From positions 62,001-126,000 of IMG/VR virus record IMGVR_UViG_3300024054_000362: a DNA stretch of 64,000 nucleotides, one strand, 5' to 3'. The translations under genes and the position numbers were made by a program. Shown in pieces: positions 201-44,710 of this stretch. Each line of letters opens with the position of its first letter. Positions within the stretch are counted from its first letter, which is position 1. The notes under the pieces are model-generated. The model was not told the origin of the DNA. It did not search any database and worked only from the letters and a program-made list of their open reading frames with translations.

Positions 201-1037
201 TCACGCAGCCCTCCGACGACGACGCATCAACCAGTAACCGCCACCGCCGACAGCCGCCACCGCTCCGACGATCGCGAACCACATCACTGGATTGTTTACA
301 CGGAAGAAGTTGTCACGCTCCTCGCCCGGACGTGCGGACGTTGTTGCTGGAAATTGCGATCCTGGAAACTGCGATCCTGGAACCTTCGGCGGTACGAACG
401 GCGGCGAGCTGGATGGCGGAACCGTCGTCGGTCCCACGTCAACACGCGGCGGTTCGACGGTCGTTGGTACGGGCTCCGTCGATGTCGAGGCCGGCGGCGT
501 CACCGACGTTGCTCCCCCCGGCGCAGGCTCGCCGACGGCAACCGCGAACGTCGCGATGTCGACTTGCTGCACGCCTTGTGGCGGGGCATCGGTCTCGGCG
601 ACCGACTGGTGGGTCACAGCTTGGCCGAAGTACCCACCGAAGCCCGATCGCGGCGTCGCCATCGCAGCTGCCGGCGTGAGTGCAGTGATGAAACCGGCCG
701 CTGTCGGCGTCATCGGCGTCAACGTACGCGGTGGTACTGGAAGCGGTGGCGGCCGTAGCACGTCGAACGTCACCGCGATGCGCCACTTCCCACGACGCGC
801 GTCGAACGCTGTGATCGTCCCGGCCGGATACAGACAGCCGACGGACGTCGCGATCATCCACGGCGCCGGGCAGAGCGGCGGTTGCGTGGGTTGTGGGTTG
901 GTCGTCAACGCAGGCGCGAACTGTCCCGAACGCAGGCAGCCGCGCGACGTCAACACGGAACCCGGCGGACACGCTTGTGGCGTCACCGTTGGTGTCGTCG
1001 GTGTCATTCCGGGTGCGGTGGGCGATGCCGAGAACAT
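201..1037 (-). CDS. Pro/Thr-rich membrane-anchored virion protein, paralog family A
   Basis: GTITAFDARRGKWRIAV motif, GFGGYFGQ, C-terminal WFAIVGAVAAVGGGGYWLMRRRRR. Confidence 0.7.
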   Translation of the reverse strand: MFSASPTAPGMTPTTPTVTPQACPPGSVLTSRGCLRSGQFAPALTTNPQPTQPPLCPAPWMIATSVGCLYPAGTITAFDARRGKWRIAVTFDVLRPPPLPVPPRTLTPMTPTAAGFITALTPAAAMATPRSGFGGYFGQAVTHQSVAETDAPPQGVQQVDIATFAVAVGEPAPGGATSVTPPASTSTEPVPTTVEPPRVDVGPTTVPPSSSPPFVPPKVPGSQFPGSQFPATTSARPGEERDNFFRVNNPVMWFAIVGAVAAVGGGGYWLMRRRRRAA

Positions 1038-1039
1038 GT

Positions 1040-2119
1040 TCAGGCCGCCTTCGCTGCGGGGACAGTTCTGCGACGACGGATATACCAGTAACCGCCACCC
1101 ACAGCGGCCACACCGCCGATCGTAGCGACCCAGAACAACGGCTTCTTGTAGAACGGCGTCGTGCCGGTCAGCTTCTCCAGCTCGGCCTCAGTAACCTGTC
1201 GAGCAGGCGCTGCGGGTGCGGTCGTCGACGGTGCCGTCTCGGTGAACGTCGCGCTCGCAGCTTGTCCGAGGCCACAGTCCCCGAAGATGCACTGACCGCC
1301 TCCGAACGTGGTGTCACGCATGATGCCAAAGCCAAGACCGGCCGTCTTGGGAGGTGTCGTAGTCGTCGGTGTCGGCGTTGTGACCGGAACCTTTGGGACG
1401 GCGACGCGATACTTGCCGAGCTTCTTGCTGAATGCGTAGACCGTGCCGGCCTTGACCGGGCTGGCCTTGACCGGGCTGGCCTTGAGCACCGTACCTGTCG
1501 TCAAGCTTTTCAGAACGTCCGGCGAGACGTGCGCCGTGATCTTGCGGCCACCGCTTGTCGTTGTCCCTGGTGCACCGGGCGTTCCCGCTTGCGGCGTTGT
1601 GCCAGCGGGGAAGATGACACGTAACGCTTTTTCGATGATCGCTGCTTGTCCGCCGACAGCGTTGTAGATCGTGTCGCGCATCTTCAAGGCCGCATCTGCG
1701 GCTTGATCACCTCTACCTTCACTGATTTCATTGCCGACTCCACGAATTAGCGCAGTAACATCTGTGAAGTGGCGGAACAAATCATATAGATTGAAGAAGC
1801 CTTTCGTCCAGCTCTCGATCTGAGCATTAGCGTCCTTCAACGTCGTAACGATCTCGGTGATGGCCGACTTGACGTCCGGCTGCTTGTCGAGCAACGACAA
1901 CTTGCTGACGAATTCAGCCGTTGCAATGAACTCGTTGAAGATCGCCGCCATCGTGATGTCGTTGATCACGCCGGTTGCTTGATCCTGTGGAATCTTTTTT
2001 CGGCTTATCAAATAAGTCTGGAGCGACTTGATCGCAGGCGAAGACATCTCTGCCCCGAGACCATTCATCGGGCTCAGGAAACCGGCCGGGCTCGCACCGA
2101 GAAGTTGAGTCGTCAGCAT
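1040..2119 (-). CDS. membrane-anchored protein, family A, with peptidoglycan-binding-like N-region
   Basis: ATG 2119 after GGAG RBS; AIKSLQTYL..ATGVINDITMAAI; GTVYAFSKKLGKYRVAV; EKLTGTTPFYKKPLFW-TM-RRRR. Confidence 0.75.
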   Translation of the reverse strand: MLTTQLLGASPAGFLSPMNGLGAEMSSPAIKSLQTYLISRKKIPQDQATGVINDITMAAIFNEFIATAEFVSKLSLLDKQPDVKSAITEIVTTLKDANAQIESWTKGFFNLYDLFRHFTDVTALIRGVGNEISEGRGDQAADAALKMRDTIYNAVGGQAAIIEKALRVIFPAGTTPQAGTPGAPGTTTSGGRKITAHVSPDVLKSLTTGTVLKASPVKASPVKAGTVYAFSKKLGKYRVAVPKVPVTTPTPTTTTPPKTAGLGFGIMRDTTFGGGQCIFGDCGLGQAASATFTETAPSTTAPAAPARQVTEAELEKLTGTTPFYKKPLFWVATIGGVAAVGGGYWYIRRRRTVPAAKAA

Positions 2120-2180
2120 CCGCGTGCTCCTTGGTCGATCGCGCGAGCGATCTAACCCCTTCAAGCTACGCGGTGGGGAG

Positions 2181-4160
2181 CTACCTTGTCAAACGTCGTC
2201 GCCGTCGGTACAGCACGTAACCGCCCGCTCCTGCTGCGATTACGCTAGTCCCCACCACGACCCAGAACAACGGTTGCTTGGTGATCGGCAACGTGCCCGT
2301 CGCCTTCTGGAATTCGGTCAGTGCCACGAGCGACGTGCTCGATGGTAACGTCGCCGCAGTTTGCTGGACGACTTCAAAGGGTGCGCTTTGCTCAAAAGCG
2401 CCGAGCCTTGTATGAACTCGTTTCGCGATTCGAAAACGCTGGATCTTCGGATCGAATGCGGCAATCGACCCCCTCGGATAGATCGGCGTCGTAGCAAGCG
2501 GGACAACTGGTGGCGTCAACGGCAGGAGCACCTGGCCGCCAACGGGCGTCTTCCCCGGACAACCCGTCACGTCGTTGGCAGCAGTCGCCATCGTGATCAT
2601 GTTCGCGGAGATGTTCGCGAGGATCGACGCACGCAGCTGTAGGAGGTGATTCGGAATTCCCGTAACTGGTGTCGACGAACCCGCGCCGGGCGACAGCGGC
2701 GCCGGCTTGGGGAAGTCCATCGCGAGGAACTTCAAGATCGCATACACCAGCTCGGCGACGTCGAGCGCCGCGCAAGCCGCGCGACCCTGTGCCGCTGCCG
2801 ATACGACGGCGGCTGACGTCGCCGGTGTTGCGACGAGACCGGTTCCAGCAGCCGCGATCGCGACGACGACATCGTTGTTGATCAGTGCGCAGCCGAACTC
2901 CTTGATGGTGGAGTAGATCTCCCCGATGTTGTCTTCGATCCAATTCCACGCGTCCGACGCAGCGTCGATGACCGTTCGCGCAGCAGCTGCAACAGCATCG
3001 GCAACGTAGTCCCACGGGTACCGCGATTCGTCTGGATCGGGGACGCGCTTGATCACGAGCAGCTCGGTCTGATCGTTCCAGAACGCGCCCATACGCGAGC
3101 CGTCGTTGCCCTTGAAAACGAGGAACGCAATCGCGCCACGCCGAACACTCAGGTCGAGCGAATCACCTTCGTTTTTGTGTTTCTCCCACTCAGCGAGATC
3201 GCGTGCCGCGAGATTCGCGCGCGGAGCCTTACCGGAGTACGACCGTGACGCGCCCCAGTCCGCCGACACGATCTCCTTACCCTTGGGCCACTCACGGTGG
3301 TCGCGTACTGCCTCACGCGCCATGATCCCTGGCGAAGGTGGTGGCAGCACGGGCTGGCAACCGGCTGGCGACGGACACGTCGTCAGCTGCGCCGTCATCA
3401 ACGGATACTTGATCGTTCGATCGACCTTCTTACACCACTGCCCCGAACGAAGTCGCTCCCAGTGGCCCGGCACGCCGGGCGACGCCGCCCAAATGAAGTT
3501 TCCGTCCGCGCTACACGTTCCGACTTCTGGTGCTGCATTGGTCGCACAACCGCCGAGGCCAATTTCACCGTTTCCACCAAGCCCATAGAGCGGACCGTCG
3601 ATCTTGGGGTCGTAGAAACGGGGCGGACGCCAATCCGACGCGAGAACCGCCTCAGCAGATCCCAACCCTGACGACGGCGCAGGCGGCGGGATGACGGCAA
3701 GCAGTGTTGCGATCGGAGCTGCTGCAACGCTCAACGCGCTCTTCACGGCCTTCATCGCGTTGTCGATGCTGCTCGCAACACCGCCACCGCCTGGAATCAA
3801 CCGAATGATGCCGAGCAGCGCGCTGTAGACCGTATCGATGATCCACGGCGAGAGGACGACGTTGATCACTTCCTCGCCGTACGGGATGACGCTGATCGGT
3901 TTTTTGATCAGTCCAACGACGTCGACAGCAGCGCCGACGACAGGATGGATCTGCGTCCCTACGAACTTTCCCGTATGCGCGATCGCGATGATCGTGCTCA
4001 ACGTCATCGTCCCGTCGTAGCGCGCAGGATCGCATTCGAGCTTCCCACGCTCGAATGCAAAACGGCGGAGCTGCTCCTGCAGCGCCTTTACGCCCGCCGT
4101 GACACCCGTCGGAATCGCGGCGGCGTCACCGAGCAAGTCACCTTGGTTGTAGTGGAGCAC
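2181..4160 (-). CDS. large membrane-anchored virion protein, family A
   Basis: 659 aa; GVKALQEQL..YDGTM; GSIAAFDPKIQRFRIA; QKATGTLPITKQPLFW-TM-RRRRR; several GLG motifs. Confidence 0.75.
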   Translation of the reverse strand: MLHYNQGDLLGDAAAIPTGVTAGVKALQEQLRRFAFERGKLECDPARYDGTMTLSTIIAIAHTGKFVGTQIHPVVGAAVDVVGLIKKPISVIPYGEEVINVVLSPWIIDTVYSALLGIIRLIPGGGGVASSIDNAMKAVKSALSVAAAPIATLLAVIPPPAPSSGLGSAEAVLASDWRPPRFYDPKIDGPLYGLGGNGEIGLGGCATNAAPEVGTCSADGNFIWAASPGVPGHWERLRSGQWCKKVDRTIKYPLMTAQLTTCPSPAGCQPVLPPPSPGIMAREAVRDHREWPKGKEIVSADWGASRSYSGKAPRANLAARDLAEWEKHKNEGDSLDLSVRRGAIAFLVFKGNDGSRMGAFWNDQTELLVIKRVPDPDESRYPWDYVADAVAAAARTVIDAASDAWNWIEDNIGEIYSTIKEFGCALINNDVVVAIAAAGTGLVATPATSAAVVSAAAQGRAACAALDVAELVYAILKFLAMDFPKPAPLSPGAGSSTPVTGIPNHLLQLRASILANISANMITMATAANDVTGCPGKTPVGGQVLLPLTPPVVPLATTPIYPRGSIAAFDPKIQRFRIAKRVHTRLGAFEQSAPFEVVQQTAATLPSSTSLVALTEFQKATGTLPITKQPLFWVVVGTSVIAAGAGGYVLYRRRRRLTR

Positions 4161-4168
4161 GCACGTAC

Positions 4169-4957
4169 CTAGTAGTACGCCGCCTTCGCCACGACAGGTG
4201 CACGACGACGCATGAGCAGCGCCGCGCCGCCACCAAGGATGATCACGCCGCCCGCGATCGCGACCCAGAAGAGCGGCTTCTTGAAGATCGGCTGCGTGCC
4301 CGTCTTCTCTTCGAAGTTACCCTCCGTGATCGTTGTGGCGCTTGCTGAAGGCGTTGCCGCGGATGGAATTTCAGAAATGGTTGGGGATGCACCTAAACCG
4401 AAAAAATCGCGCAAACCGGTTTGCGGCGGCAACGTCGTACCAACGGGAATGCCAACACGCCACAACCCCGTCTTGGCACTGAACGCTTGAACTGATCCGA
4501 CCGGCAGGTTGGTGTATGTCTGCGGTGTGCCAGTACTCGATGGCGTCGTCGGAAACTGCGTCGACGGCGGAAACTGCTGTGTTGATGTCGTCGGGAATGG
4601 CTGGCTCGGTGGGAACTGCTGGTCCGCGCCTGCCGGCTGGAACGTGTTCGATGTCTGGAACGCCGCGAACCGTGGATCCGTCGAAGACGACGATGTCGTC
4701 TGGAACGACGGTCCGAAAGCCGCCTGCGCGAGATGTGCGTTCGCCGTTGTGGTCGGCGTGTGCTGCTCTGCGGGTCGACCGCCACAGATCCCTTGCGCGG
4801 CGGACGTCACGAAGGCACCCATCGCCTGCGGCGTCGAGCGTGGCGCATGAACGCCCTCGACAGCAGGTCCGATCTCGCAAGCGAGATTCTGCAGATCGGC
4901 CACAGTCGAGTCCTCGACTGGGCGCGCATCACGACCGTTCAGCTGCGCGTAAAGCAT
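4169..4957 (-). CDS. membrane-anchored protein, family A
   Basis: GSVQAFSAKTGLWRVGIP; EEKTGTQPIFKKPLFW-TM-RRR; QQFP repeats. Confidence 0.75.
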   Translation of the reverse strand: MLYAQLNGRDARPVEDSTVADLQNLACEIGPAVEGVHAPRSTPQAMGAFVTSAAQGICGGRPAEQHTPTTTANAHLAQAAFGPSFQTTSSSSTDPRFAAFQTSNTFQPAGADQQFPPSQPFPTTSTQQFPPSTQFPTTPSSTGTPQTYTNLPVGSVQAFSAKTGLWRVGIPVGTTLPPQTGLRDFFGLGASPTISEIPSAATPSASATTITEGNFEEKTGTQPIFKKPLFWVAIAGGVIILGGGAALLMRRRAPVVAKAAYY

Positions 4958-5096
4958 GTTGGCTCCAAGTCGATCGCGCGCGCGATCTTGACACTTTCAA
5001 GCTACTCGCCGGGTACGCACGTTGTCAAATGCCCGATCGCAGCAGCGATCGCCGCGAAGCTACCCAGAAACCCTGAGGTCATGTTAGGTTGAACGT

Positions 5097-5942
5097 ATGA
5101 CCGAAGCGGTACTCGGGCGCGCTTTCACCGTCGGTGCTCAGGCCGGCCGCGCGCTCGCGCGACGACATCGCGTCCGCAGCTCCCTCGGTGCAACCGACGG
5201 GTTGACTACGACTTCCAGTGAAAAGATCGCCATCGCTGCCATCATCGCAGGCGGTGTCGCCGTGCTTGGTGGTGCAATCGCGTATGGAATTGCCGCGCGC
5301 CGTCGTACGGCTACACTGCGAGACACGCTCGGTCGCGTCCAGACACGCGTCAGCAAGGGCGGCATGACGCTCACCCACCACTACGATCCAGAGATGCCGA
5401 TCCAGCAACGCGTCGGCATTCTCCAGGATCTCGTGTGGAAGGGCGTCACCAACCCACAGATGCGCGAACTTGCGCTCGCGATCACGGGCTACGGAACACG
5501 TGACGTCACCGTCGGCAAGCGGCGATTCCGTGTGAAGGGTGCGGGTTGTCCCGCGCGCGACGGACTTTGCGAGTCCGAGGCGGTCTACAACTGGACCAAG
5601 AACAACATCCGCTACACCGGCGACGTCGCGCCCGTGAAGATGCCAGGAGGTGACGTTGAAGGCGTCGACCTCTTCCAGGCACCGCACCGCACCGTCGAAT
5701 TCGGTGGCGAAGACTGCGATGGCCACACGGTCGTCACGACGACGCTTCTCTCACTCAACGGCATCCCTGCAAAGTTTCGCATCACCGCGCCGACGAAATC
5801 TAGTGACTGGGCACACATCTTCGGGCTCGCGGGCCTCCCGAAGACCAATCCGAAGCGTTGGGTGCCCTTGGATACAACCCTTCCAGGAAACATGTTTGGA
5901 CGAGAAGTACCCTCGGCCAAGCACATGGATTTTGTTGCTTGA
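5097..5942 (+). CDS. transglutaminase-like cysteine enzyme with N-terminal TM (putative maturation protease)
   Basis: VYNWTKNNIRY, GGEDCDGH (Cys), WAHIF (His), WVPLDTT (Asp): transglutaminase-core triad order; hydrophobic segment IAIAAIIAGGVAVLGGAIAYGIA. Confidence 0.8.
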   Translation: MTEAVLGRAFTVGAQAGRALARRHRVRSSLGATDGLTTTSSEKIAIAAIIAGGVAVLGGAIAYGIAARRRTATLRDTLGRVQTRVSKGGMTLTHHYDPEMPIQQRVGILQDLVWKGVTNPQMRELALAITGYGTRDVTVGKRRFRVKGAGCPARDGLCESEAVYNWTKNNIRYTGDVAPVKMPGGDVEGVDLFQAPHRTVEFGGEDCDGHTVVTTTLLSLNGIPAKFRITAPTKSSDWAHIFGLAGLPKTNPKRWVPLDTTLPGNMFGREVPSAKHMDFVA

Positions 5943-9918: not shown

Positions 9919-10680
9919 ATGAAGAACAACGGCAATCTGGGTGACACCGACGGCTTCTCCGACGTCGGCGAGGTCGACATGTTCGGCCTCGATGAATTCG
10001 GACAACCTGCGGGCGGCGACTCCATGTGGGGTGCCGTCATCGGTGGTGGTGTCGGAACCGGCGTCGCGATGATCGCGCGCAAGATGACGAATAATCCGAC
10101 GAAGTCCATCCACAAGTTCTCCGAGCTGCTCGGCCTCGCGGCCGGCGGTATCGCAGGCGGCGTGATGATGGCGTTCCCGAGCACGCGTCGCATGGGCTGG
10201 GCTGCAGCCGCGACCGCGCTCGTGACGAACGGCCTACGTCAGCTGGAGAACTCGCTCGACAAGCAGGCGCAGCAGGCGGCGGCGAGCCCGACGGGTACGG
10301 CGCCGACGCCGACGCCGGCCGCGTTCGGTCGCGGCTTCGGCATCCCGACGATCGAGCCAGGCTACGTCGTCCCGGCCAACCTCCCAGCGATGGCGAACAA
10401 CGGCTTCGGTGCTGTGACGATCGATCCGGCCTTCCCGGTTCCGGGCTCGATCCACGGTGGCGGCATGGGCGGTGTCGTGATCGACCCGACCGCGGTGATC
10501 CAGCCGGGGCAGGGCTTCGGTCGCCCGGTCGAGCTGGTCGGTCCGCCGACGCTCGTCGGTGCCGGCGACTACGGTATGAGCGACAACGCGGGCGCGAACC
10601 AGACCAAGATCCTGGGCGGCCCGAGCCTGTCAGCCATGGGCGCGCACTTCGGCGCGACCCTGTTCGGCGGCAACAACTAG
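9919..10680 (+). CDS. Gly-rich membrane-associated internal virion protein
   Basis: strong codon bias, hydrophobic helices, repeated GFG-xx-I[ED]P; directly upstream of the putative MCP. Confidence 0.65.
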   Translation: MKNNGNLGDTDGFSDVGEVDMFGLDEFGQPAGGDSMWGAVIGGGVGTGVAMIARKMTNNPTKSIHKFSELLGLAAGGIAGGVMMAFPSTRRMGWAAAATALVTNGLRQLENSLDKQAQQAAASPTGTAPTPTPAAFGRGFGIPTIEPGYVVPANLPAMANNGFGAVTIDPAFPVPGSIHGGGMGGVVIDPTAVIQPGQGFGRPVELVGPPTLVGAGDYGMSDNAGANQTKILGGPSLSAMGAHFGATLFGGNN

Positions 10681-10830: not shown

Positions 10831-11580
10831 ATGGCCGGAGCAGTTGGCGTAGCGCCATCAACCACCACCCTCACGCTGCCCGACGGCAGCACCATCGCCC
10901 TCGCGGACTGGATCGACGACAAGCTGTACGGCTCGGTCCAGTTCCAGAACGGGCTCACCACGCCGCTGGAGGCCTACTCGTCGGGCCGCAGCCAGCCGAT
11001 CCCCGGCGGCCAGCGCGTGCAGACGCGCGTCGACACCAACATCCCGCGCAACGGCGACTCCGGTCTGCCCAAGGACTGGGAGATGCTCGTCTATGGATGG
11101 GGCATCGAGGTCGTGCGCGTGATGCGCGCGCCGGACACCGCACCGGATCGCCCGACGCTGAAGGACGACTTCTCGACGGTGATCCCGGGCGCGGGCGCCC
11201 CGATCGCGCCGTTCGCGCTGTCGGATCCGCCGATGCTCGTGACGCTGTTCCAGATGGATCGTGTGACGTTCTTCCAGTACGAGTACAACGCCAAGTTCTA
11301 CACGCAGGGCGTCCTCCAGGACTACCCGCAGGGACACGGCTACAACGTGTTCTCGACGAACACGGCGTTCGAGCTGGCGCAGAACGGCGTGCCGTCGCCG
11401 CGCGACCGCGTCGCGCTCGTGCTCCCCGTGCACGAGCGCGAGAACCTCGGCTACAAAGGCATCTTTCAGCCCGAGGCACCGGTGCGCATCGCGCAAGCTG
11501 CATCGGATGGTGCTACGGCACTGAACTTCGCGGACGTCAAGCTCTACAAATACGGTCTAATCAAAAGAACCGTGGTGTGA
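10831..11580 (+). CDS. putative major capsid protein (single jelly-roll-like)
   Basis: very strong GC3 codon bias, beta-rich, no TM, KLYGS..TRVDTNIPRNGDSGLPKDWEMLVYGWGI motif, followed by a strong terminator; fold inferred, not searched. Confidence 0.5.
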   Translation: MAGAVGVAPSTTTLTLPDGSTIALADWIDDKLYGSVQFQNGLTTPLEAYSSGRSQPIPGGQRVQTRVDTNIPRNGDSGLPKDWEMLVYGWGIEVVRVMRAPDTAPDRPTLKDDFSTVIPGAGAPIAPFALSDPPMLVTLFQMDRVTFFQYEYNAKFYTQGVLQDYPQGHGYNVFSTNTAFELAQNGVPSPRDRVALVLPVHERENLGYKGIFQPEAPVRIAQAASDGATALNFADVKLYKYGLIKRTVV

Positions 11581-14021: not shown

Positions 14022-14607
14022 GCGTAGCGTCCATATACACAGATCACTCACAGATCACCGTGATCTTCTTCTTGGTACGGATGATCTTCGCCAGCATTTC
14101 GAAAAACGCTGCGATGTCTTCACCGTCCGCACTCGAAAATTCACAAATCACGCGCGCTGCCAGAAGCTGTCTCGGCAGAGGCTTGGTAGGTACGCGACTC
14201 TCCGGTGGCTCGATGTCGTCAACGATCGTCTTCTCGACCTCGTCTATCGCCGACCGCGCCGCATGGCGCTGACCAACATCATGGCCACACGGTGTAACTA
14301 ACGTCGTTCCAATCGGGCACGTGTTGCATGCGTCGCCGCGACAGAACGGACACGTCGGACCTGGGCACGTGAGCGGCGAGATGTCTCTAGGTTACCCGAG
14401 TTGTCGATCGCTGGAGCGATCCAGTCGCGCACGGCATCTTGCTCTCGACTTGGCGGTCGTGTTACGGCTGACACCGCGATCGATGAGTTAGGGGTTGGTC
14501 TGCACCGTACGTAACGCCTCGATTTGATTTGGGAAAATCTCCGTTGTCAGACAGCTCCTGTAGCGTTGATCGCGTTCAACCGACCGTTTCAGAAGGAGCA
14601 CGAGAGC

Positions 14608-16917
14608 ATGGGGAAGAAGATCGACGCCGTTTCGTTCGAGATCGACAAGGGCCTCTACCTGATCGAGCAGACGATCAGTCCGGGACAATCAACCAAGGCT
14701 GCCGAAACGCCGACCAATCACATCGCCGTCATCGACTGCTCGGGCAGCATGACCAGCGATCTGCCGCGCATCCGCGAACAGCTCAAGAAGAAGCTGCCGA
14801 AACTGCTCAAGGACGGCGACACGCTCTCGATGATCTGGTTCTCGGGCAAGGGCGAGACTGGCGCTCTGTTCGAGGCCGAACCTGTCGCGACGCTCGCCGA
14901 TCTCAACGACGTCAACAAGGCCGTCGACCGCTGGCTGCGCCCGATTGGCCTGACCGGCTTCAAGGAGCCGCTCGTCGAGGTCGAGAAGCTCGTCGGCCGC
15001 GTCGCCAAGAAGAACAAGAACCCGTTCTCGCTCTTCTTCATGAGCGACGGCTGCGACAACCAGTGGCCGCGCGCCGACATCCTGAAGGTCGTCGAGAAGA
15101 CGGCCGGCGTTCTGGCTTCGTCAACGTTCGTCGAGTACGGCTACTACGCCGACCGACCGCTGCTCGCCGCGATGGCCGAGAAGGCCGGCGGAACGCACAT
15201 TCACGCCGATGCCTTCGACAAGTACGAGGTCACGTTCGAGGCTTCGATGCAGAAGCGGCCGATGGCGGGCAAGCGCGTCGAGGTCGCTGTCGGCGGCGAC
15301 CCGATCGGCGGCTTCGCGTGGACGATCACGTGCGACGACGATCTCGTCACCTATGACGCGTCGACCGGCAAAACGTCCGTCCCCGAATTCACCGAAGCTA
15401 TCTACTACTTGTCGCCGACCGCCGTCGGCAACACAGGACTCCTGGCAGACCGCGCCGAGAGGGAGGCATCCGGCAAGGCGCGTTGCGCGATCAGCCCCGC
15501 GCACGCGGCGATGTCACTCTTCGCCGTTCGCATGAAGCCGGACATCGTCTACCCGATCCTGAAGGCACTCGGCGACGTCGCATTCATCGATCAATTCAGC
15601 GTGTGCTTCGGCAAGCAGAAGTACTCCGAATTCATGGACGCCGCGAAACTCGCCGCCGTCGACGAGACCAAGCGCTACACGAAGGGCCGCGACCCCAAGA
15701 AAGTCCCAACCGACGATGCGTTCACGGTGCTCGATCTACTCCGCGTGCTTTCTGAAGACGATAACACGCGGTTGCTCCTCGATCACCCCGACTTCAAGTA
15801 CTCGCGGATCAGCCGCGGACGCGTCGACGCCGACGAAAACCTGACCGCCGACGAACAGCTCGCCGTCGAGGTCATCCGTCAACAGATGGCCGGCGAGAAG
15901 TCCGCCAAGCGTCTCAAGGAGCTACAGTCTGAACTGGACGGCGTTCTCGCAGCCAAGCGCGACGCACTCAAGTTCGTGGCCGACGAAGCGCCGGACGGCT
16001 ATGCGATCTCAGGCCTCGTGTTCAACGAGAACAGCCCGAACATCAGCGTGCGCGTCAGGAAGACCGGCAAGGTCGATCTGTCGTCGCGTCCGGATCACGC
16101 CAAGTACAAGATCCCGACGAGCTTCCAGACGCACATCTGGCGCAACTACGCGATCGTGAGCCACGGCCTCGTGAACGTCGACAAGCTACCGGTTCGAATG
16201 TCGAAGACGGTGTGGGACACGCTTCACAAGGCGGGTGTTGCGATGTCCGATGACGGACACGGAACCGTCGTCATCGATGTGAAGCCGCTGCCGATCATCA
16301 ACCGCAAGATGGTCAAGGCGGTCTCCGCGAAAGACATCATCGAGCTGGAATATGAGCTGACGCGGGCTCGCGCCGCGCAGAAGGTCTACAAGGCCTACCA
16401 GGGCGAGCTGTTCCCGGACGCGAAGACCAAGAGCTTTGCCGATCTCTACGGTGAAGACGGCGCGACGTGGCTCAAGGACAACGGCTTCACGTACAACGGC
16501 TTCGCGCCGAAGATGGTCCAGGCCGAGAGCAAGGACTTCATCGTCGGCAAGGAGCTGGAGGTGAAGCTCAAGGGCTACTCGACGCTGCCGTCGCTCAAGG
16601 ACGCCAAGGCGAAGATGGGCGGCAAGATGAACGGCCCGACTGCGCTCATGGCGAAGGTGATCAACGAGGTCGACGACTTCCTCAAGAAGAACCCGAAGAA
16701 CCTCCACGAGAAGTGGCTCACGGGACAGACGCAGGCGCAGATCGCGAAGACCCGTGGCCTCATCTACCAGACGGCGCAGATCAAGTTCGGGATCATCGTG
16801 GGCCAGGTCTGGTTCAATGAATGGTCGAGCCTCGACGAAAACACCATGACGGTGAAGATCGACGGGCAGGAGATCGTCGGCGTCTGCGAGATGCGCGAGA
16901 TTGAGATCAGGATCTAG
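14608..16917 (+). CDS. large vWA-domain protein
   Basis: AGGAG RBS; MIDAS motif IDCSGSM, T, FMSDG; strong codon bias. Confidence 0.8.
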   Translation: MGKKIDAVSFEIDKGLYLIEQTISPGQSTKAAETPTNHIAVIDCSGSMTSDLPRIREQLKKKLPKLLKDGDTLSMIWFSGKGETGALFEAEPVATLADLNDVNKAVDRWLRPIGLTGFKEPLVEVEKLVGRVAKKNKNPFSLFFMSDGCDNQWPRADILKVVEKTAGVLASSTFVEYGYYADRPLLAAMAEKAGGTHIHADAFDKYEVTFEASMQKRPMAGKRVEVAVGGDPIGGFAWTITCDDDLVTYDASTGKTSVPEFTEAIYYLSPTAVGNTGLLADRAEREASGKARCAISPAHAAMSLFAVRMKPDIVYPILKALGDVAFIDQFSVCFGKQKYSEFMDAAKLAAVDETKRYTKGRDPKKVPTDDAFTVLDLLRVLSEDDNTRLLLDHPDFKYSRISRGRVDADENLTADEQLAVEVIRQQMAGEKSAKRLKELQSELDGVLAAKRDALKFVADEAPDGYAISGLVFNENSPNISVRVRKTGKVDLSSRPDHAKYKIPTSFQTHIWRNYAIVSHGLVNVDKLPVRMSKTVWDTLHKAGVAMSDDGHGTVVIDVKPLPIINRKMVKAVSAKDIIELEYELTRARAAQKVYKAYQGELFPDAKTKSFADLYGEDGATWLKDNGFTYNGFAPKMVQAESKDFIVGKELEVKLKGYSTLPSLKDAKAKMGGKMNGPTALMAKVINEVDDFLKKNPKNLHEKWLTGQTQAQIAKTRGLIYQTAQIKFGIIVGQVWFNEWSSLDENTMTVKIDGQEIVGVCEMREIEIRI

Positions 16918-30733: not shown

Positions 30734-31396
30734 ATGAGTCTCACCCAAGATACGGACTTCAAGTGCGTCGACAAAGCGGGCAACCCGCTGAACTTCTGCT
30801 TCGGGATCGGTGCAGCAAACCACACGCTGCTTCAGAAGTTGCAACAAGCAGTCAACCGGCTCGCGAACCTCGGTGGATTCCCCGCGTTGACCGTCGACGG
30901 TTTTATCGGACCTGATACGGTGGCTGCCGTTCGAAAGGTGCTCTTCATCGGCCCCGTAGGCAGCCTTCCTTGGACCAAGGAGACAATCTCCAACAACGCG
31001 TCTGAAGTCATCGACGGGTTGAACAGTATCGCCGCCGATCTTCAAACCAGGGGCGACGTACTAGCGCCCGAGGGTACGCCCGTCGAGCCGACCATCCAGA
31101 CGATGGCGACGTCGACCGGTATTCCTCAAGAAAGCGCAGCTGACATCATCGCCGCCGCACTCGGACCGGCACCGAGTAACCAAAAAACCTTCAAGCTCCT
31201 GCCGTGGATCTTGGGTGGCTTGGCGGTCGTCGCCGCTGTCGGCGTCGGCGGCTACTTCTACCACCGCCACAAGGCGCGTCAGCAACTCGGATGGGGCGAC
31301 GACGATGATTTCGGAGACGATGATCTCGGAAACGATGATCTCGGCGACGACGATCTCGGCGACAACGACTTCGACGGCGGTAGCGAGGAGCTATAG
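30734..31396 (+). CDS. peptidoglycan-binding-like membrane protein, family B
   Basis: LQQAVNR..LTVDGFIGPDT; TM; acidic DDDLG repeat tail. Confidence 0.7.
   Translation: MSLTQDTDFKCVDKAGNPLNFCFGIGAANHTLLQKLQQAVNRLANLGGFPALTVDGFIGPDTVAAVRKVLFIGPVGSLPWTKETISNNASEVIDGLNSIAADLQTRGDVLAPEGTPVEPTIQTMATSTGIPQESAADIIAAALGPAPSNQKTFKLLPWILGGLAVVAAVGVGGYFYHRHKARQQLGWGDDDDFGDDDLGNDDLGDDDLGDNDFDGGSEEL
31301..31375 (+). repeat. 5 x 15-nt coding tandem repeat (DDD[LF]G)
   Basis: GACGATGATYTCGGM-like units. Confidence 0.85.
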
Positions 31397-40040: not shown

Positions 40041-41924
40041 ATGAGCAAGTTTACCCCCGGCACCTACCGCCTGACCGTCGAGGTCGTGAACCCTACGCCC
40101 GATCGTCGCGTCAAGGACGATTGGCGCAAGCGCCCGACGGTCCCCAACGGGAAAATTTTCCGCGTGATCAGCATGTACTCGGGCATGGAGAACCCCGAGA
40201 CGGGTGAGGCGATCAGAATTGCCAAGCTCGTTCCCGTCGGAGATCGTTTCTGGATCCTACACGACGTCACGATCGACGGGCGCTACGAGCACAAGGAGCT
40301 GTGGACCGCGCCCGACGGTGCATGGCGCCTTGCCATGTGTCTCAATAACGACGCCAGCGACGATCGCGAAGAGGGTCTTGCAGACGTCGCGCTCGGGATC
40401 TTAAAGGGTACAAAAAAGCTCGTCGGGAACGAGAGCGGCATGAAGCTCGTCAAGGAGCACAAGAAGGTCACCGAGGCCTACTTGAAGCAGGTCGCGTTCA
40501 TCTACGCCGGCCGCATTCGCATCCGCGACAAGTGGTACCGCCCGATCGCGTACGTGACCAACTGCGGTCGACACGACATGCGCAACGATCACAACAAGCC
40601 TGTGTACCGTTGCCGGGACAACATGGGCTACGCCAACCGCGCGTGGCATTACGCCGGACCCGACGAAATCGTCTCCGAGAGCGCCACCTACCCCGACCCC
40701 GATCATCCCAGCATCAAGCGCGAGGTCATCTTCCGCGCCTGCGGCGACCGCCCCCACTGGCTGGACGTGCCGATCACCGAACAGGCCGCCGTCGACGAGT
40801 ACCTCGCGGCAGGACAGTTCCTTGAAGAGCGCAGCCACTCGATCATGTACCGCAACGAAGATGTGTCATCCGACGAGGAGACGCCGATCAATCGAAAGCG
40901 GATCCTCGCGCTCGGCGAGCGCGTCTCGCGCGAGCGCAAGGCCATCAAGAACGGCGACCTGACGCCGATGAACGCGCGCCTCAACGCTGAGCTGGAGCTA
41001 GCGCAGGTGCTCGACGAGGACGATCGTCCGATCGTGCAAGTGCTGCGCACCGACAAGGCGCCCAAGAAGAAGTCCGAAGCTCCGCTCGAAGAACATCTCG
41101 GTCCCGACACGCTCGCCTCCGTCCAGAAGAAGATCGTAGGTCTTCGTGAAGATTTGTACCTAGCCCGAGAGATCGACGACGAGGACGAGCGTGAGCTTGC
41201 CGAAGAACAAATCGAGCGCGAGTTGGAAGATCTGCGCGTGCGAGAACTTGCCGTGTTGCGCGAAGCGATTCTGAAACAGGCGAACGGCGATCTGATCGAT
41301 CTCACCTGGGACGCAGTCATGAAGACCCGCCCCCTCGACGGGGAGGAGGCTCGCATCCCTGCTGGCAGTATCAAGGTCCCGCGCGCGCCGTTCCTACACT
41401 GGGCGTTCGCTCGCATGAAGATGTTCGAGTCGCAACTCCCACCATGGAAATGCGTCTGCCCCTCAGGCATGAAGATGGCGATGGACGATCCGTTCCACAC
41501 CGACTGGGTCGTCGGTGGCGGTCTCGATCCACAGAACCGCGAACTACTCTACTACCCGGGTCCTGTTTGCGAAGCGTCGCTCAAACTCGCCCACGAGCTA
41601 CAGGACAAGTTCGATGCGCCTAGCGACGTGCACGTCCTCGTCGACGGTGCACCTGTCGGCGGCGCCATCCACCATGGCCGTAAGAAGAAACCGTGTCCCG
41701 ACGGTGCGATCGTCGTGCTCCCCAACCTGCATCCTGACTACGTCGAGACCATCGAGAACGCGGCGGCGGTCATCACCGAAGAAGGCGGCATGACGGCACA
41801 CCTCGCCCAGGTTGGTCGTGAGCGCGCTCTACCGATCGTCCGCATCGCGAACGCACGTACGCGCTTTCAGGAAGGCGACATGGTGGTGGTCAACACGGCG
41901 AACCGGACGGTAATGGGCGTATGA
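40041..41924 (+). CDS. multidomain protein with C-terminal PEP-utilising mobile (phospho-His) domain
   Basis: AAAVITEEGGMTAHLAQVGRERALPIV..EGDMVVVN. Confidence 0.7.
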   Translation: MSKFTPGTYRLTVEVVNPTPDRRVKDDWRKRPTVPNGKIFRVISMYSGMENPETGEAIRIAKLVPVGDRFWILHDVTIDGRYEHKELWTAPDGAWRLAMCLNNDASDDREEGLADVALGILKGTKKLVGNESGMKLVKEHKKVTEAYLKQVAFIYAGRIRIRDKWYRPIAYVTNCGRHDMRNDHNKPVYRCRDNMGYANRAWHYAGPDEIVSESATYPDPDHPSIKREVIFRACGDRPHWLDVPITEQAAVDEYLAAGQFLEERSHSIMYRNEDVSSDEETPINRKRILALGERVSRERKAIKNGDLTPMNARLNAELELAQVLDEDDRPIVQVLRTDKAPKKKSEAPLEEHLGPDTLASVQKKIVGLREDLYLAREIDDEDERELAEEQIERELEDLRVRELAVLREAILKQANGDLIDLTWDAVMKTRPLDGEEARIPAGSIKVPRAPFLHWAFARMKMFESQLPPWKCVCPSGMKMAMDDPFHTDWVVGGGLDPQNRELLYYPGPVCEASLKLAHELQDKFDAPSDVHVLVDGAPVGGAIHHGRKKKPCPDGAIVVLPNLHPDYVETIENAAAVITEEGGMTAHLAQVGRERALPIVRIANARTRFQEGDMVVVNTANRTVMGV

Positions 41925-43592: not shown

Positions 43593-44687
43593 ATGCCACT
43601 GTCGTTCGAGAAGACCGAGCAAGCACTGCTCGCTTGCGTCAAGACCCAGATCACGCCCGTCGTCGTCGGACCGCCCGGAATCGGCAAGACGGCGATCGTC
43701 CGCGCCGTCGGCGTCAAGGCCAAGCTGCCGGTGCACGAGCTGTTGGCATCGAACTGCGACGCCGTCGACATCGCCGGTTTCCCGTTCGTCGATGCCAAGA
43801 CCGCAACGCTGAAGCGCGCACTGCTGCCGGAGATCGAAGCCTGTGTCAAGGCGCCCGGCATCCTGTTCCTGGACGAACTGACGGCTGTCCCGCCGAGCGT
43901 ACAGGGGCCGCTGATGCGGCTGCTCCTCGAACGATACGCAGGTGGGACTCGTCTGCACCCCGAGAGTTGCGTCGTCGGCGCCGCCAACCGTCCCGAAGAG
44001 TGTCCCGGCGGCATCGAATTGTCGGCAGCCAGCATCAACCGCGTGATCAAGATGGTCGATTTCATGCCGACCCTCGACGAGATCCGTGGCTACTTCGAGC
44101 GTGTCGGCGATGCTGGTACGCGTCTCCACGAGGAGATGGTCGATTTCGCAGCCACGCTCGCGGTCAACGCAGACCTTCTCGACATGTCGCCACCACGCGC
44201 GTCGATCGATGCCGGTGCGCCGTTCGCGTCGCCGCGCGCGTGGGATCGAGGACTCACGGTGTACGCCAGCTACTGCGACGCGGCCAAGGTTGGATTCAAC
44301 CTCGGTCAGAACGAGGATGACGTCGGCTTCGCGCTGCTCTCCGGCGCTGTGGGGGAGACCAAGGCGGTCGCGTTCTTCGCGATCCGCAAGATGCGCAAGC
44401 ATCTACCGAGCATCGACGACATCCTCAACGATCCTGTGAAGGCCAAGGTCCCAGAGAAGAAGGACCAGCAGATCGCAGCCGTTGGGCTCATCGCGCGCGT
44501 CGCCGAGAAGGATCTCTGGGCGTCATGGATCTACGTCGAGCGCCTCCTGCCCGAGATCAGTGCCGCGTGCGCGCGTGTCCTCATGACCAAGAACGACCCC
44601 GGCAAGTCGAAGTGGCTCATGCAAGGCAAGAACGCGCAGGTCAACGGCCTCGCTGCGATTCATCGTAGCATGAACACCAAGCCGTAA
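43593..44687 (+). CDS. MoxR-like AAA+ ATPase
   Basis: GPPGIGKT, LFLDEL, GAANRP, SPRAW. Confidence 0.88.
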   Translation: MPLSFEKTEQALLACVKTQITPVVVGPPGIGKTAIVRAVGVKAKLPVHELLASNCDAVDIAGFPFVDAKTATLKRALLPEIEACVKAPGILFLDELTAVPPSVQGPLMRLLLERYAGGTRLHPESCVVGAANRPEECPGGIELSAASINRVIKMVDFMPTLDEIRGYFERVGDAGTRLHEEMVDFAATLAVNADLLDMSPPRASIDAGAPFASPRAWDRGLTVYASYCDAAKVGFNLGQNEDDVGFALLSGAVGETKAVAFFAIRKMRKHLPSIDDILNDPVKAKVPEKKDQQIAAVGLIARVAEKDLWASWIYVERLLPEISAACARVLMTKNDPGKSKWLMQGKNAQVNGLAAIHRSMNTKP

Positions 44688-44710
44688 CTCAGCTCGTAGG
44701 AGCGCCGTCC

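What the first reader, a model, noticed from the sequence alone, without database searches (positions are those of the whole stretch)
201..4957. Four tandem paralogs share a C-terminal module and a tripartite anchor but have unrelated N-termini
Seen: all four have G[ST][IV]xAF-x5/6-[WYF]R[IV]. Three continue with E..[LF][EQ]..TG..P..K.PLFW; the fourth has PVMW. All end in a Gly-rich TM and poly-Arg. This motif-TM-basic layout resembles protein-sorting tails (PEP-CTERM/GlyGly-CTERM style). Inference: an exchangeable display platform for variable ectodomains on the viral membrane.
Basis: partly seen in the sequence, partly recalled or inferred. Interest (0 to 1): 0.6.

Follow-up and report, generated by a model that had tools for sequence, protein, structure and literature searches.

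The report
Viral tail-anchored membrane protein gene family
Four neighbouring genes of an uncultured 221-kb bacterial virus encode proteins that share a previously undescribed C-terminal membrane-anchoring module; it defines a family known so far only from related uncultured viruses and probably holds cell-wall-facing domains on a membrane.

Summary
Genes at 201-1037, 1040-2164, 2181-4160 and 4169-4957 (minus strand) end in the same module. It has a beta-hairpin (YPxG[ST]IxAF..K..[WYF]R[IV]A), a GLG..xEV strand, a short helix (E.EF.KKTG), [KN]P.[FM]W, a Gly-rich TM helix and RRR(R). Leave-one-out HMMs recover each paralog at E 6e-10 to 1e-22.

A profile search finds 230 cluster representatives, and the module is C-terminal in 146 of 154 scored. 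No Pfam, PHROG or NCBIfam family covers it, and no solved or predicted fold matches it.

"Unrelated N-termini" is only partly right. The P0002 and P0003 N-domains are homologous (hhalign 97%) and weakly PG_binding_1-like. P0001 is a shortened mosaic.

The cassette sits beside a membrane-anchored transglutaminase-like gene. That arrangement recurs in four related contigs with DNA and, by gene order, in two more. No relative of the largest paralog was found in 185,579 prokaryote genomes.

It is not a PEP-CTERM, GlyGly-CTERM or LPXTG sorting signal. There are no signal peptides, no matching motif and no sorting enzyme.

My best reading is that these are tail-anchored membrane proteins, probably of a virion membrane or entry apparatus. 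The function is inferred, not shown.

The parts
4169..4957 (-). P0004 (262 aa), first gene of the cassette. It has a conserved Cys-containing N-terminal region, a P/T/Q-rich linker and the shared C-terminal module.
   Evidence: ORF and translation. Orthologs at 37-76% identity conserve the whole N-terminus, so the full ORF is real.
4172..4507 (-). Shared module of P0004 (residues ~151-262): hairpin, third strand, short helix, KKPLFW, Gly-rich TM helix and RRR tail.
   Evidence: Alignments A1 and A4. The AF2 model has mean pLDDT 79.7 with strands 18-22, 27-33 and 56-62 and helices 74-81 and 90-112 of the 124-residue query.
2181..4160 (-). P0003 (659 aa, GTG start), the largest and best conserved paralog. 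It has an N-terminal helical domain, five internal hydrophobic or Ala/Gly-rich segments, an alpha/beta domain at ~290-370 and the shared module.
3936..4112 (-). N-terminal helical domain of P0003 (residues ~17-75). It is weakly PG_binding_1-like and homologous to the P0002 N-domain.
   Evidence: hhalign 97.3%. Pfam PG_binding_1 hits 8 of 25 aligned members, best E 0.0013. A PDB profile hit falls on the PG-binding region of 4nso_A at E 0.02. VIA-align gives Z 4.8 to the SltB3 chain 5anz_A, residues 359-420.
2184..2480 (-). Shared module of P0003 (residues ~561-659).
   Evidence: In the full-length model the hairpin 566-581, strand 595-602 and helix 614-621 have pLDDT 75-80.
1040..2164 (-). P0002 (374 aa from TTG; probable true start ATG at 2119, giving 359 aa). 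It has the N-terminal helical domain, a helical middle region, a P/T linker and the shared module with a CxFGDCGLG insert.
1865..2044 (-). N-terminal helical domain of P0002 (residues ~41-100 in TTG numbering), homologous to that of P0003.
   Evidence: hhalign E 2e-11. An HMM of the domain scores P0002 at 1e-17.
1043..1456 (-). Shared module of P0002 (residues ~237-374).
201..1037 (-). P0001 (278 aa), last gene of the cassette. It is a shortened mosaic with a P0001-type CPPG..GC motif, a P0004-type hairpin, a long P/T/V-rich linker and a P0001-type tail (ERDNFFRVNNPVMW, TM helix, RRRRRAA).
   Evidence: Orthologs are 414-484 aa.
204..830 (-). Shared module of P0001 (residues ~70-278), with a ~110-residue low-complexity insert between the hairpin and the tail.
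   Evidence: Leave-one-out E 2e-12.
4958..5096 (.). A 139-bp divergent intergenic region between the cassette and the transglutaminase-like gene. It is the presumed promoter region for both.
   Evidence: Gene layout. The sigma-70 consensus scan found nothing here, so the promoters are not identified.
5097..5942 (+). Transglutaminase-like (papain-fold Cys enzyme) protein of 281 aa with one TM helix (residues 44-69) that ends in RRR. It is transcribed divergently and is co-conserved with the cassette.
   Evidence: PF01841 E 8.7e-5, 23.2 bits against a cut-off of 23. Orthologs are 78-84% identical next to the cassette in L001, L012 and L013. An interrupted ortholog is present in L023. TM segment.

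Best explanation
The four genes form a conserved operon-like cassette of paralogous, C-terminally anchored (tail-anchored) membrane proteins. They belong to an uncultured clade of ~100-220-kb bacterial viruses.

Shown:
- Each protein ends in the same ~100-residue module. It consists of a three-stranded beta element, a short helix, a [KN]P.[FM]W junction, a Gly-zipper-like TM helix (GGV...GGG.Y) and an Arg cluster.
- The module is always C-terminal.
- It is joined to many different N-terminal regions and is swapped or homogenised between paralogs.
- It is genetically linked to a membrane-anchored transglutaminase-like enzyme.

Inferred:
- The Arg cluster stays on the cytoplasmic, DNA-proximal or capsid-proximal face.
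- The rest of each protein lies on the opposite face. That part comprises Cys-pair-containing regions, P/T-rich linkers and, in P0002 and P0003, a weakly PG_binding_1-like domain.
- The juxtamembrane module and the glycine-rich helix act as a common anchoring and assembly unit. They bring the paralogs, and possibly the transglutaminase-like enzyme whose TM helix has the same pattern, into one membrane complex.

Most likely role (inferred): these are components of the virus's own membrane or entry apparatus. They would engage and cross the host cell wall at infection, as the membrane-associated DNA-delivery proteins of PRD1 are reported to do (recalled, not tested here). P0003, with five extra hydrophobic segments, would be the membrane-remodelling member.
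For: - Module reality: leave-one-out E 6e-10 to 1e-22.
- Family size: 230 representatives at E<=1e-3 and 79 at <=1e-10 among 1.84 billion proteins.
- Position: the module lies within 25 aa of the C-terminus in 146 of 154 scored members.
- Fold: the AF2 model of the module has mean pLDDT 79.7 with a hairpin, a third strand, a helix and a TM helix.
- Conserved residues: 108-sequence consensus yPaGsItAfdpK.G.wRiAvP...GlG...Ev...TGt.PfYKkPlFW.AigGGVvvvGGGgY.l.RRR.
- No signal peptide: the maximum hydropathy in the first 40 residues is 0.29-1.14, against a TM threshold of 1.5.
- Ectodomain hints: PG_binding_1 or PG_binding_3 weak hits in 8 and 2 of 25 N-domains; a PDB profile hit on a PG-binding region; VIA-align Z 4.8 to chain 5anz_A residues 359-420 of SltB3; conserved Cys pairs visible in the sequences.
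- Exchange: identity matrix of 16 modules from 4 genomes.
- Synteny with the TGase-like gene in L001, L012, L013/L014 and L023 and on two further contigs.
- Viral context: the record is an IMG/VR virus that CheckV rates 100% complete. No tailed-phage structural family appeared among ~165 proteins scanned or in six-frame searches. A HerA/FtsK-type ATPase is present. 55 of 230 genes carry a TM-like segment. A 249-aa conserved protein ~6 kb away, with high GC at third codon positions, has PM2-P2 and PRD1-P3 capsid families as its nearest named neighbours by language-model features, at 0.76-0.77, which is a lead only.
Against: - Nothing shows that these proteins are in virions or that the virion has a membrane. 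The capsid lead is below the tool's reliability mark, and Pfam P2_N and P2_C find nothing.
- An N-out topology for 150-600-residue domains without a signal peptide is hard to achieve through the Sec/YidC export route. That is general knowledge and was not tested here.
- The PG_binding_1 similarity is below Pfam's threshold. It does not extend significantly to P0001 orthologs or to the genome's own PG_binding_1 protein (E 0.3-1.2).
- Module-to-module binding could not be evaluated. The complex prediction returned no verdict.
- The host is unknown.
Confidence: 0.45

Rival explanations
1. The proteins are not virion components. They would be made during infection and inserted into the host cytoplasmic membrane. 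There they would manipulate the envelope through superinfection exclusion, cell-wall remodelling, lysis timing, or anchoring of a replication or assembly site. The shared module would serve only as a common membrane anchor.
For: - The anatomy is the same as in the best explanation.
- The genome encodes several other C-tail-anchored proteins, including a C39 peptidase. This suggests a general strategy of tail-anchoring proteins to a membrane.
- The genome also has GH25 and two M23 cell-wall hydrolases.
- No direct evidence of a virion membrane was found.
Against: - The cassette lies in a block conserved across the clade. That block also holds small TM proteins and the best capsid candidate, both with high GC at third codon positions. 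This is more typical of a morphogenesis module.
- Exclusion or lysis genes are usually single and variable. They are not normally a four-gene set kept in order across genomes whose orthologs are only 37-56% identical.
Confidence: 0.3
2. The C-terminal motif, TM helix and basic tail form a cleavable sorting signal in the manner of PEP-CTERM, GlyGly-CTERM or LPXTG. A dedicated enzyme would recognise it, remove the anchor and attach the ectodomain to the cell wall, a lipid or another protein. That enzyme could come from the host, or could be the viral transglutaminase-like or C39 cysteine enzyme.
For: - The tripartite layout is like that of known sorting signals.
- NCBIfam LPXTG_anchor scores 18.1 bits on the P0001 tail (cut-off 15.9). 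LAVTG, GVDTG and PVV-CTERM give weak hits.
- A membrane-anchored papain-fold Cys enzyme is always adjacent.
- A tail-anchored C39 peptidase is also encoded.
Against: - The HMM hits cover only the TM and basic part of the models (profile positions 11-34 of 34), not the signature motif.
- No PEP-CTERM or GlyGly-CTERM model hit was returned.
- There is no N-terminal signal peptide in any paralog.
- The genome has no sortase, exosortase or rhomboid.
- Conservation continues well upstream as a folded domain, unlike short sorting tags.
- If the positive-inside rule holds for both proteins, the catalytic domain of the TGase-like enzyme lies on the Arg side of the membrane, away from the motif. This is inferred.
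Confidence: 0.1
3. The similarity is a compositional artefact of Gly-, Pro- and Arg-rich translation in a 61% GC genome, not homology.
For: The linkers are low-complexity, with P+T+S+A at 34-48%. The genome is GC-rich.
Against: - Position-specific motifs are conserved across 108 diverse sequences.
- The leave-one-out E-values are strong.
- The structure prediction is confident.
- Orthologs are syntenic in at least five other contigs.
Confidence: 0.01

Closest known systems
C-terminal protein-sorting signals (LPXTG/sortase, PEP-CTERM/exosortase, GlyGly-CTERM/rhombosortase)
   Same: A short signature motif comes immediately before a moderately hydrophobic, Gly-rich TM helix, and an Arg/Lys cluster follows at the extreme C-terminus. 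The TM and basic part of P0001 even passes the LPXTG_anchor score cut-off.
   Different: - There are no signal peptides.
- The signature here ([KN]P.[FM]W) is different.
- The conserved region extends ~60-100 residues upstream as a folded beta/alpha element.
- The virus encodes no sorting enzyme of those families.
- Cleavage is not indicated.
Membrane-associated DNA-delivery proteins of internal-membrane phages such as PRD1 (for example the transglycosylase P7). This is recalled from the literature and was not tested here.
   Same: A cell-wall-directed N-terminal domain is held on a viral membrane by a TM segment. Several small membrane proteins are encoded together in the structural region.
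   Different: No sequence or fold similarity was detected. PRD1 proteins do not share a common C-terminal module. The presence of a virion membrane is unproven here.
Bacterial tail-anchored membrane proteins (ElaB/YqjD type; my own knowledge)
   Same: They have a single C-terminal TM helix ending in a few basic residues and no signal peptide.
   Different: Those are ribosome- or stress-associated cytoplasmic proteins. They lack a juxtamembrane beta module, paired cysteines and PG-binding-like domains. No homology was detected.
PG_binding_1 (PF01471) domains of cell-wall enzymes
   Same: The N-domain of P0002 and P0003 has the pattern V-K-x-LQ-x-x-L ... DG-x-x-x-x-x-T. It gives weak Pfam, PDB-sequence and structural matches.
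   Different: All hits are below curated thresholds. The third helix region diverges and continues into a longer helical domain.
Phage tape-measure or internal ejection proteins
   Same: P0003 has long helices and several Ala/Gly-rich hydrophobic segments. It gives weak hits to phrog_305 (E 0.0018) and to a tape-measure chain, 9ndy_F (E 0.025).
   Different: The hits are marginal. No tail genes were found in the genome. P0003 also carries the family's C-terminal anchor.

Membership tests
PEP-CTERM / exosortase system | C-terminal PEP motif, TM helix and Arg cluster recognised by the PEP-CTERM model | tested here: not met
   The NCBIfam scan at E<=10 returned no PEP-CTERM model for any of six family members. 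The motif here is [KN]P.[FM]W.
PEP-CTERM / exosortase system | N-terminal Sec signal peptide on the substrate | tested here: not met
   There is no hydrophobic stretch in the first 40 residues of P0001-P0004. The maximum 19-residue hydropathy is 0.29-1.14.
PEP-CTERM / exosortase system | Cognate exosortase (PF09721) encoded with the substrates | tested here: not met
   A six-frame search of the 221-kb genome gave no match at E<=1. The host genome is unknown, so a host enzyme cannot be excluded.
GlyGly-CTERM / rhombosortase | GlyGly motif tail and a rhomboid-family protease | tested here: not met
   No GlyGly-CTERM model hit was returned. No rhomboid (PF01694) is present in the genome.
LPXTG / sortase | LPXTG-type motif before the TM helix and basic tail | tested here: not met
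   TIGR01167 scores 18.1 bits on P0001 (cut-off 15.9), but only over profile positions 11-34, which are the TM and basic part. The motif positions are unmatched, and the other paralogs give no hit.
LPXTG / sortase | Sortase (PF04203) present | tested here: not met
   No match in the genome.
Tail-anchored membrane proteins (operational class) | A TM helix (the only one in P0001, P0002 and P0004) within ~30-40 residues of the C-terminus, and no signal peptide | tested here: met
   P0003 has five additional internal hydrophobic segments.
PG_binding_1 (PF01471), N-domain of P0002 and P0003 | A match to the Pfam model above its gathering score | tested here: inconclusive
   8 of 25 aligned N-domains hit PF01471 with best E 0.0013, and 2 hit PG_binding_3 with best E 5.9e-4. 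All are sub-threshold. There was no hit for full-length P0002 or P0003.
Transglutaminase-like superfamily (PF01841), the neighbouring gene | A match to Transglut_core at or above its gathering score | tested here: met
   23.2 bits against a cut-off of 23, E 8.7e-5. Precomputed weak PF01841 hits exist on the orthologs. Catalytic activity was not tested.
Internal-membrane, double-jelly-roll (Varidnaviria-type) virus | FtsK/HerA-type packaging ATPase | tested here: inconclusive
   A 573-aa protein matches DUF87/HerA (4.8e-12) and phrog_2666, which is annotated 'terminase large subunit' (1.4e-17). A packaging role is not shown.
Internal-membrane, double-jelly-roll (Varidnaviria-type) virus | Double jelly-roll major capsid protein | tested here: inconclusive
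   Pfam Capsid_NCLDV, P2_N and P2_C give no hit. The only lead is a language-model-feature score of 0.76-0.77 for window 10831-11580.
Tailed phages (Caudoviricetes) | HK97-fold capsid, large terminase, portal and tail proteins | tested here: not met
   No PF05065 or PF03237 match in six frames. No head, portal or tail family appeared among ~165 proteins scanned with Pfam and PHROGs. Very divergent versions cannot be excluded.

The most novel reading that the evidence does not exclude
The cassette would encode the membrane-anchored cell-wall-penetration and assembly complex of a so far undescribed lineage of very large (~200 kb) non-tailed, internal-membrane bacterial viruses. These viruses would have a HerA/FtsK-type packaging ATPase and a small double-jelly-roll-like capsid protein.

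The shared module would dock a changeable set of ectodomains into the virion membrane. Viral Cys enzymes would process or cross-link them. Candidates are the adjacent transglutaminase-like protein and a tail-anchored C39 peptidase. The C39 peptidase might act on the shared N-terminal ML..Q..G...G[FL]G leader.
Probability: 0.25. Interest if true: 0.85.

Novelty: new variant of a known kind. Interest (0 to 1): 0.55.

Why it matters
- The module defines a sizeable protein family with no entry in Pfam, PHROGs or NCBIfam and no structural relative. There are at least 230 clusters at 50% identity. Its members came from viral and metagenomic contigs, and the P0003 profile found no relative in 185,579 prokaryote genomes.
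- The family gives a sequence marker for a clade of large uncultured viruses. These viruses lack every tailed-phage hallmark that I could search for.
- The family is a clear case of modular evolution. One membrane-anchoring unit is recombined with many ectodomains and homogenised between paralogs.
- If the proteins are virion-membrane components, they would be the first handle on how such a virus crosses the cell wall. The module could then serve as a natural tag for anchoring proteins to that membrane.

Tried and rejected
- Pfam and PHROGs on the four proteins gave only chance-level hits: Trp_oprn_chp at E 0.01 on the TM region, and phrog_305 at 0.0018.
- blastn of the first 8 kb of the window and tblastn of P0002 against 50,697 phage records gave no match.
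- The ESM Atlas feature search with P0003 gave no usable hit.
- Fold searches with the full P0003 model (mean pLDDT 54) gave nothing significant. Foldseek against PDB gave a best E of 0.14, and against BFVD a best E of 0.023 with TM below 0.1. VIA-align wide returned only long-helix matches at Z<=5.7.
- Fold searches with the module model also gave nothing. Foldseek against PDB gave a best E of 1.5. VIA-align wide gave a best Z of 3.7. The Atlas gave a best TM of 0.45, to an FtsH extracellular-domain cluster.
- Complex prediction with the P0002 module and the P0004 module returned 'no answer', score 0.00. This is evidence neither for nor against binding.
- With the P0003 alignment, the search for related loci found no relative in genome contigs and two viral contigs.
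- I tried to infer the host from the viral CRISPR repeat. There were five single matches in unrelated MAGs and none lay in an array, so the result is uninformative.
- The N-domain HMM does not significantly match P0001 orthologs or the protein at genome 130753-131649 (E 0.3-3.4). I therefore dropped the idea that all paralogs share that domain.
- Searches of the papers library for a description of this virus clade or of accession MT836346 found nothing relevant.
I made no further attempt and did not use read laying.
- No alternative genetic code was needed or used.
Full report
**The sequence**

The window is bases 62,001-126,000 of a single 221,422-bp contig with 61% GC. IMG/VR classes it as a linear virus record, and CheckV rates it 100% complete.

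At its left end, four ORFs lie head to tail on the minus strand:
- P0004: 4169-4957, 262 aa.
- P0003: 2181-4160, 659 aa, GTG start.
- P0002: 1040-2164, 374 aa from TTG. Orthologs begin MLTTQ, so the true start is probably ATG 2119.
- P0001: 201-1037, 278 aa.

The gaps between them are 8, 16-61 and 2 nt, so the arrangement looks like an operon. A transglutaminase-like gene (5097-5942) is transcribed divergently across a 139-bp spacer.

**Checking the observation**

All four proteins contain G[ST][IV]xAF-x5/6-[WYF]R[IV]. Three continue to TG..P..K.PLFW, and P0001 has NPVMW instead. All four end in a Gly-rich hydrophobic helix followed by RRR(R).

HMMs built from any three modules recover the fourth at E 2e-12, 1e-22, 6e-10 and 4.5e-18. 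The background was about 2,700 six-frame ORFs of the genome. The best unrelated ORFs score 3e-4 to 0.03. The shared module is therefore real.

The genome also holds at least two further proteins with the P0001-type tail ([KR].FF.V.NP.[MF]W, then a TM helix and a basic cluster). They lie at genome 8693-9208 and 130753-131649.

**The N-termini are not all unrelated**

- A BLAST graph of N-terminal parts links P0002 and P0003 through intermediates.
- Profile-profile comparison of their first 160 residues gives probability 97.3%, E 2e-11, over 117 columns.
- P0004's N-terminus shows no such similarity. It is nevertheless conserved in its own orthologs, including two cysteines.
- P0001 is short here. 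Its orthologs are 414-484 aa.
- P0001's hairpin is 52-60% identical to P0004-type hairpins in other genomes but only 25-29% to P0001-type hairpins. Its tail is P0001-type (49-63%). It is therefore a mosaic.
- In locus L001 the P0002-type and P0004-type proteins carry modules that are 82-88% identical. Orthologous comparisons across genomes give only 40-60%. This points to recent gene conversion.
- P0002, P0003, P0004 and three other C-terminally anchored ORFs of the genome start with ML..Q/Y...G. In most of them a G[FL]G follows 15-45 residues later.

**The family**

A profile of the four modules was searched against 1.84 billion cluster representatives.
- It found 230 proteins at E<=1e-3, 79 at <=1e-10 and 5 at <=1e-30.
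- The module ends within 25 residues of the C-terminus in 146 of the 154 scored.
- The 134 N-terminal parts of at least 40 aa fall into 40 similarity groups.
- The consensus of 108 modules is yPaGsItAfdpK.G.wRiAvP..g..GlG..a...Ev....P.G...V.e.ef.kkTGt.PfYKkPlFW.AigGGVvvvGGGgY.l.RRR.
- The two Gly clusters in the TM helix are 7-8 residues apart. This would put them on one face of the helix, as in glycine-zipper packing motifs (my inference).
- No Pfam, PHROG or NCBIfam family describes the module.

**Structure**

With the 108-sequence alignment, AlphaFold2 gives a model of mean pLDDT 79.7. The hairpin and the strand-helix region preceding the TM helix score 92-95. The elements, in the numbering of the 124-residue query, are:
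- strands 18-22 and 27-33 (the hairpin);
- a third strand at 56-62;
- a short helix at 74-81;
- the TM helix at 90-112.

The same elements appear with pLDDT 75-80 in the full-length P0003 model. That model also shows a confident alpha/beta domain at ~290-370 and an N-terminal helical domain.

No search gave a significant match. Foldseek against PDB gave a best E of 1.5. VIA-align against 48,161 chains gave a best Z of 3.7. The ESM Atlas gave a best TM of 0.45, to an FtsH extracellular-domain cluster. BFVD gave nothing with the P0003 model.

**The N-domain of P0002 and P0003**

This domain has the pattern VKxLQxxL ... DG.....T..A.
- Scanned one by one, 8 of 25 aligned members hit Pfam PG_binding_1 (best E 0.0013) and 2 hit PG_binding_3 (best E 5.9e-4).
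- A profile search of PDB sequences puts a PG-binding region of an effector (4nso_A) first, at E 0.02.
- VIA-align matches residues 17-156 of the P0003 model to residues 359-420 of chain 5anz_A, the lytic transglycosylase SltB3. The match has Z 4.8, 61 aligned residues and 21% identity.

Each of these signals is weak, although they agree. The domain HMM does not reach P0001 orthologs or the genome's own PG_binding_1 protein. I therefore call the domain PG_binding_1-like and regard family membership as unresolved.

**Topology**

- None of the four has a hydrophobic N-terminal stretch.
- The TM helix is flanked by KK on one side and by 3-5 Arg on the other.
- By the positive-inside rule (general knowledge), the Arg tail should stay on the cytoplasmic side and the body should be outside.
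- This fits the PG-binding-like domain, the P/T-rich linkers and the conserved Cys pairs (CPPG..GC, C.FGDCGLG, AC.IGP/G.CG).
- It is hard to reconcile with the lack of a signal peptide.
- The conflict is unresolved and is the main weakness of any functional reading.

**Context**

The order TGase-like(-) | P0004-like | P0003-like | P0002-like | P0001-like | two small genes | DSPc phosphatase | a ~616-830-aa coiled-coil protein recurs widely. It is seen in:
- L001 (IMG/VR, 95 kb);
- L012 (JGI 3300032342);
- L013 (ENA, 125 kb) and L014 (JGI 3300019487);
- by gene lengths, two further contigs.

A further relative lies on a 196-kb IMG/VR contig.

In the more distant locus L023, four consecutive genes of other lengths (320, 215, 354 and 170 aa) all carry the module. 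In L022 two do.

The TGase-like protein is 78-84% identical between genomes whose cassette proteins are only 37-56% identical. In L023 it is interrupted by a ~320-residue insertion directly before the CDGH motif. I take that Cys to be the catalytic one, and the insertion looks intein-like (inference).

The TM helix of the TGase-like protein (…AGGVAVLGGAIAYGIAARRR) resembles the module's helix.

No relative of P0003 was found in 185,579 prokaryote genomes.

**The virus**

The genome encodes:
- a family-A DNA polymerase fused to a UDG domain and carrying an intein;
- ribonucleotide reductase, with an insertion in the small subunit that I read as an intein;
- ThyX, a primase, several helicases and two integrases;
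- GH25 and two M23 wall hydrolases;
- a C39 peptidase;
- a type I-C CRISPR-Cas system.

Pfam and PHROG scans of about 165 proteins found no capsid, portal, terminase or tail family of tailed phages. Six-frame searches found none either.

A 573-aa HerA/FtsK-type ATPase is present. By the hydropathy threshold, 55 of 230 genes have a TM-like segment.

Window 10831-11580 encodes a 249-aa protein. It has the same length in all related loci and 88% GC at third codon positions. By language-model features, its nearest Pfam-bearing neighbours carry the PM2 P2 and PRD1 P3 capsid families. The score is only 0.76-0.77, which the tool calls a lead. The Pfam models themselves find nothing.

A non-tailed, membrane-containing virion is therefore plausible but not shown.

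**Comparison with sorting signals**

The layout of motif, TM helix and basic tail is the same.
- LPXTG_anchor passes its cut-off on P0001, but only over the TM and basic positions.
- LAVTG, GVDTG and PVV-CTERM give weak hits of the same kind.
- No PEP-CTERM or GlyGly-CTERM model hits.
- There are no signal peptides.
- The genome has no sortase, exosortase or rhomboid.
- The conserved region is a ~100-residue folded module, not a ~30-residue tag.

The family works like an anchor but is not a member of those systems.

**Verdict**

The module is a real, conserved and previously undescribed C-terminal membrane-anchoring unit. It belongs to a viral multigene family and is exchanged among paralogs.

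My preferred mechanism has three parts:
- tail-anchoring of cell-wall-facing domains in a viral membrane or entry complex;
- assembly through the juxtamembrane module and the glycine-rich helix;
- a functional link to the adjacent Cys enzyme.

All three parts are inferred, with confidence about 0.45. The main rival, at about 0.3, is that the proteins act in the host membrane during infection.

The complex prediction gave no verdict.

Noticed in passing
Genome 61-1296 (L002:61-1296), genome 217805-219958 (L011:12805-14958) and L002:2740-5900: The virus carries a type I-C CRISPR-Cas system. It has Cas8c/Csd1, Cas5d and a Cas3 HD-domain protein at the two ends of the contig. A long array of at least 34 degenerate ~36-nt repeats ending in GGATAGAAAC is also present.
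   Followed up: partly
Whole genome; L009:13878-15599 (-); window 10831-11580 (+): No tailed-phage capsid, terminase, portal or tail family was found in a 221-kb virus rated complete. A HerA/FtsK-type ATPase is present. A conserved 249-aa protein with high GC at third codon positions has PM2-P2 and PRD1-P3 capsid families as its nearest named feature neighbours, at 0.76-0.77, a lead only.
   Followed up: partly
Genome 166508-167122 (-), which is L008:6508-7122: A C39 (double-glycine leader) peptidase domain protein of 204 aa is itself C-tail-anchored and ends in RRRRAA, like P0001. Several neighbouring genes are also C-tail-anchored.
   Followed up: partly
Window 4957, 4160 and 2119 (N-termini); genome 6272-6655 (-), 8693-9208 (+) and 130753-131649 (+): At least six C-terminally anchored proteins share an N-terminal ML..Q/Y..G start, and most have a G[FL]G 15-45 residues later. 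This could be a leader or processing signal.
   Followed up: partly
Window 5226-5303 (TGase-like residues 44-69): The TM helix of the transglutaminase-like protein (AGGVAVLGGAIAYGIAARRR) has the same Gly pattern and Arg cluster as the module's helix. The module HMM scores it only weakly, at E 0.0035 in a small database.
   Followed up: partly
L023:5268-6929 (-): The ortholog of the transglutaminase-like gene is 553 aa. Its flanks are 81-85% identical to the window's protein. A ~320-residue insertion sits directly before the CDGH motif, which I take to hold the catalytic Cys. It is probably an intein. A 587-aa gene occupies the same place on the contig of P0010.
   Followed up: partly
L009:9080-12835 (-), L010:216-2198 (-) and L010:6391-8667 (-): Inteins or homing endonucleases interrupt the UDG-PolA fusion (LAGLIDADG plus an intein splicing domain) and a PD-(D/E)XK nuclease. 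The ribonucleotide reductase small subunit also has an insertion, inferred from its split Pfam match. Many free-standing HNH and Endonuclease VII genes occur across the genome.
   Followed up: no
Window 14524-16917 (+): A 797-aa protein matches phrog_2426 at E 4.6e-166. It is ~33% identical to 'vWA-containing' proteins of Dickeya, Klebsiella, Escherichia, Salmonella, Aeromonas and Shewanella phages. This is one of the few strong links to cultured phages.
   Followed up: partly
Window 30734-31396 (+): This protein has a sequence segment that looks like PG_binding_1, a TM helix and a highly acidic D/G-repeat C-terminal tail. It scores weakly with the tail HMM, at E 0.009. The scan found one PG_binding_1 protein but does not say which one.
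   Followed up: no
Window 40041-41924 (+) and 43593-46024 (+): One protein has a PEP-utilising-enzyme mobile domain. Nearby is a MoxR-like AAA ATPase paired with a DUF2201 metallopeptidase/VWA protein.
   Followed up: no
Window 9919-10680 (+): A 253-aa membrane protein with 86% GC at third codon positions is conserved in L001 (3636-4340) next to the capsid candidate. It is probably another abundant structural membrane protein.
   Followed up: no
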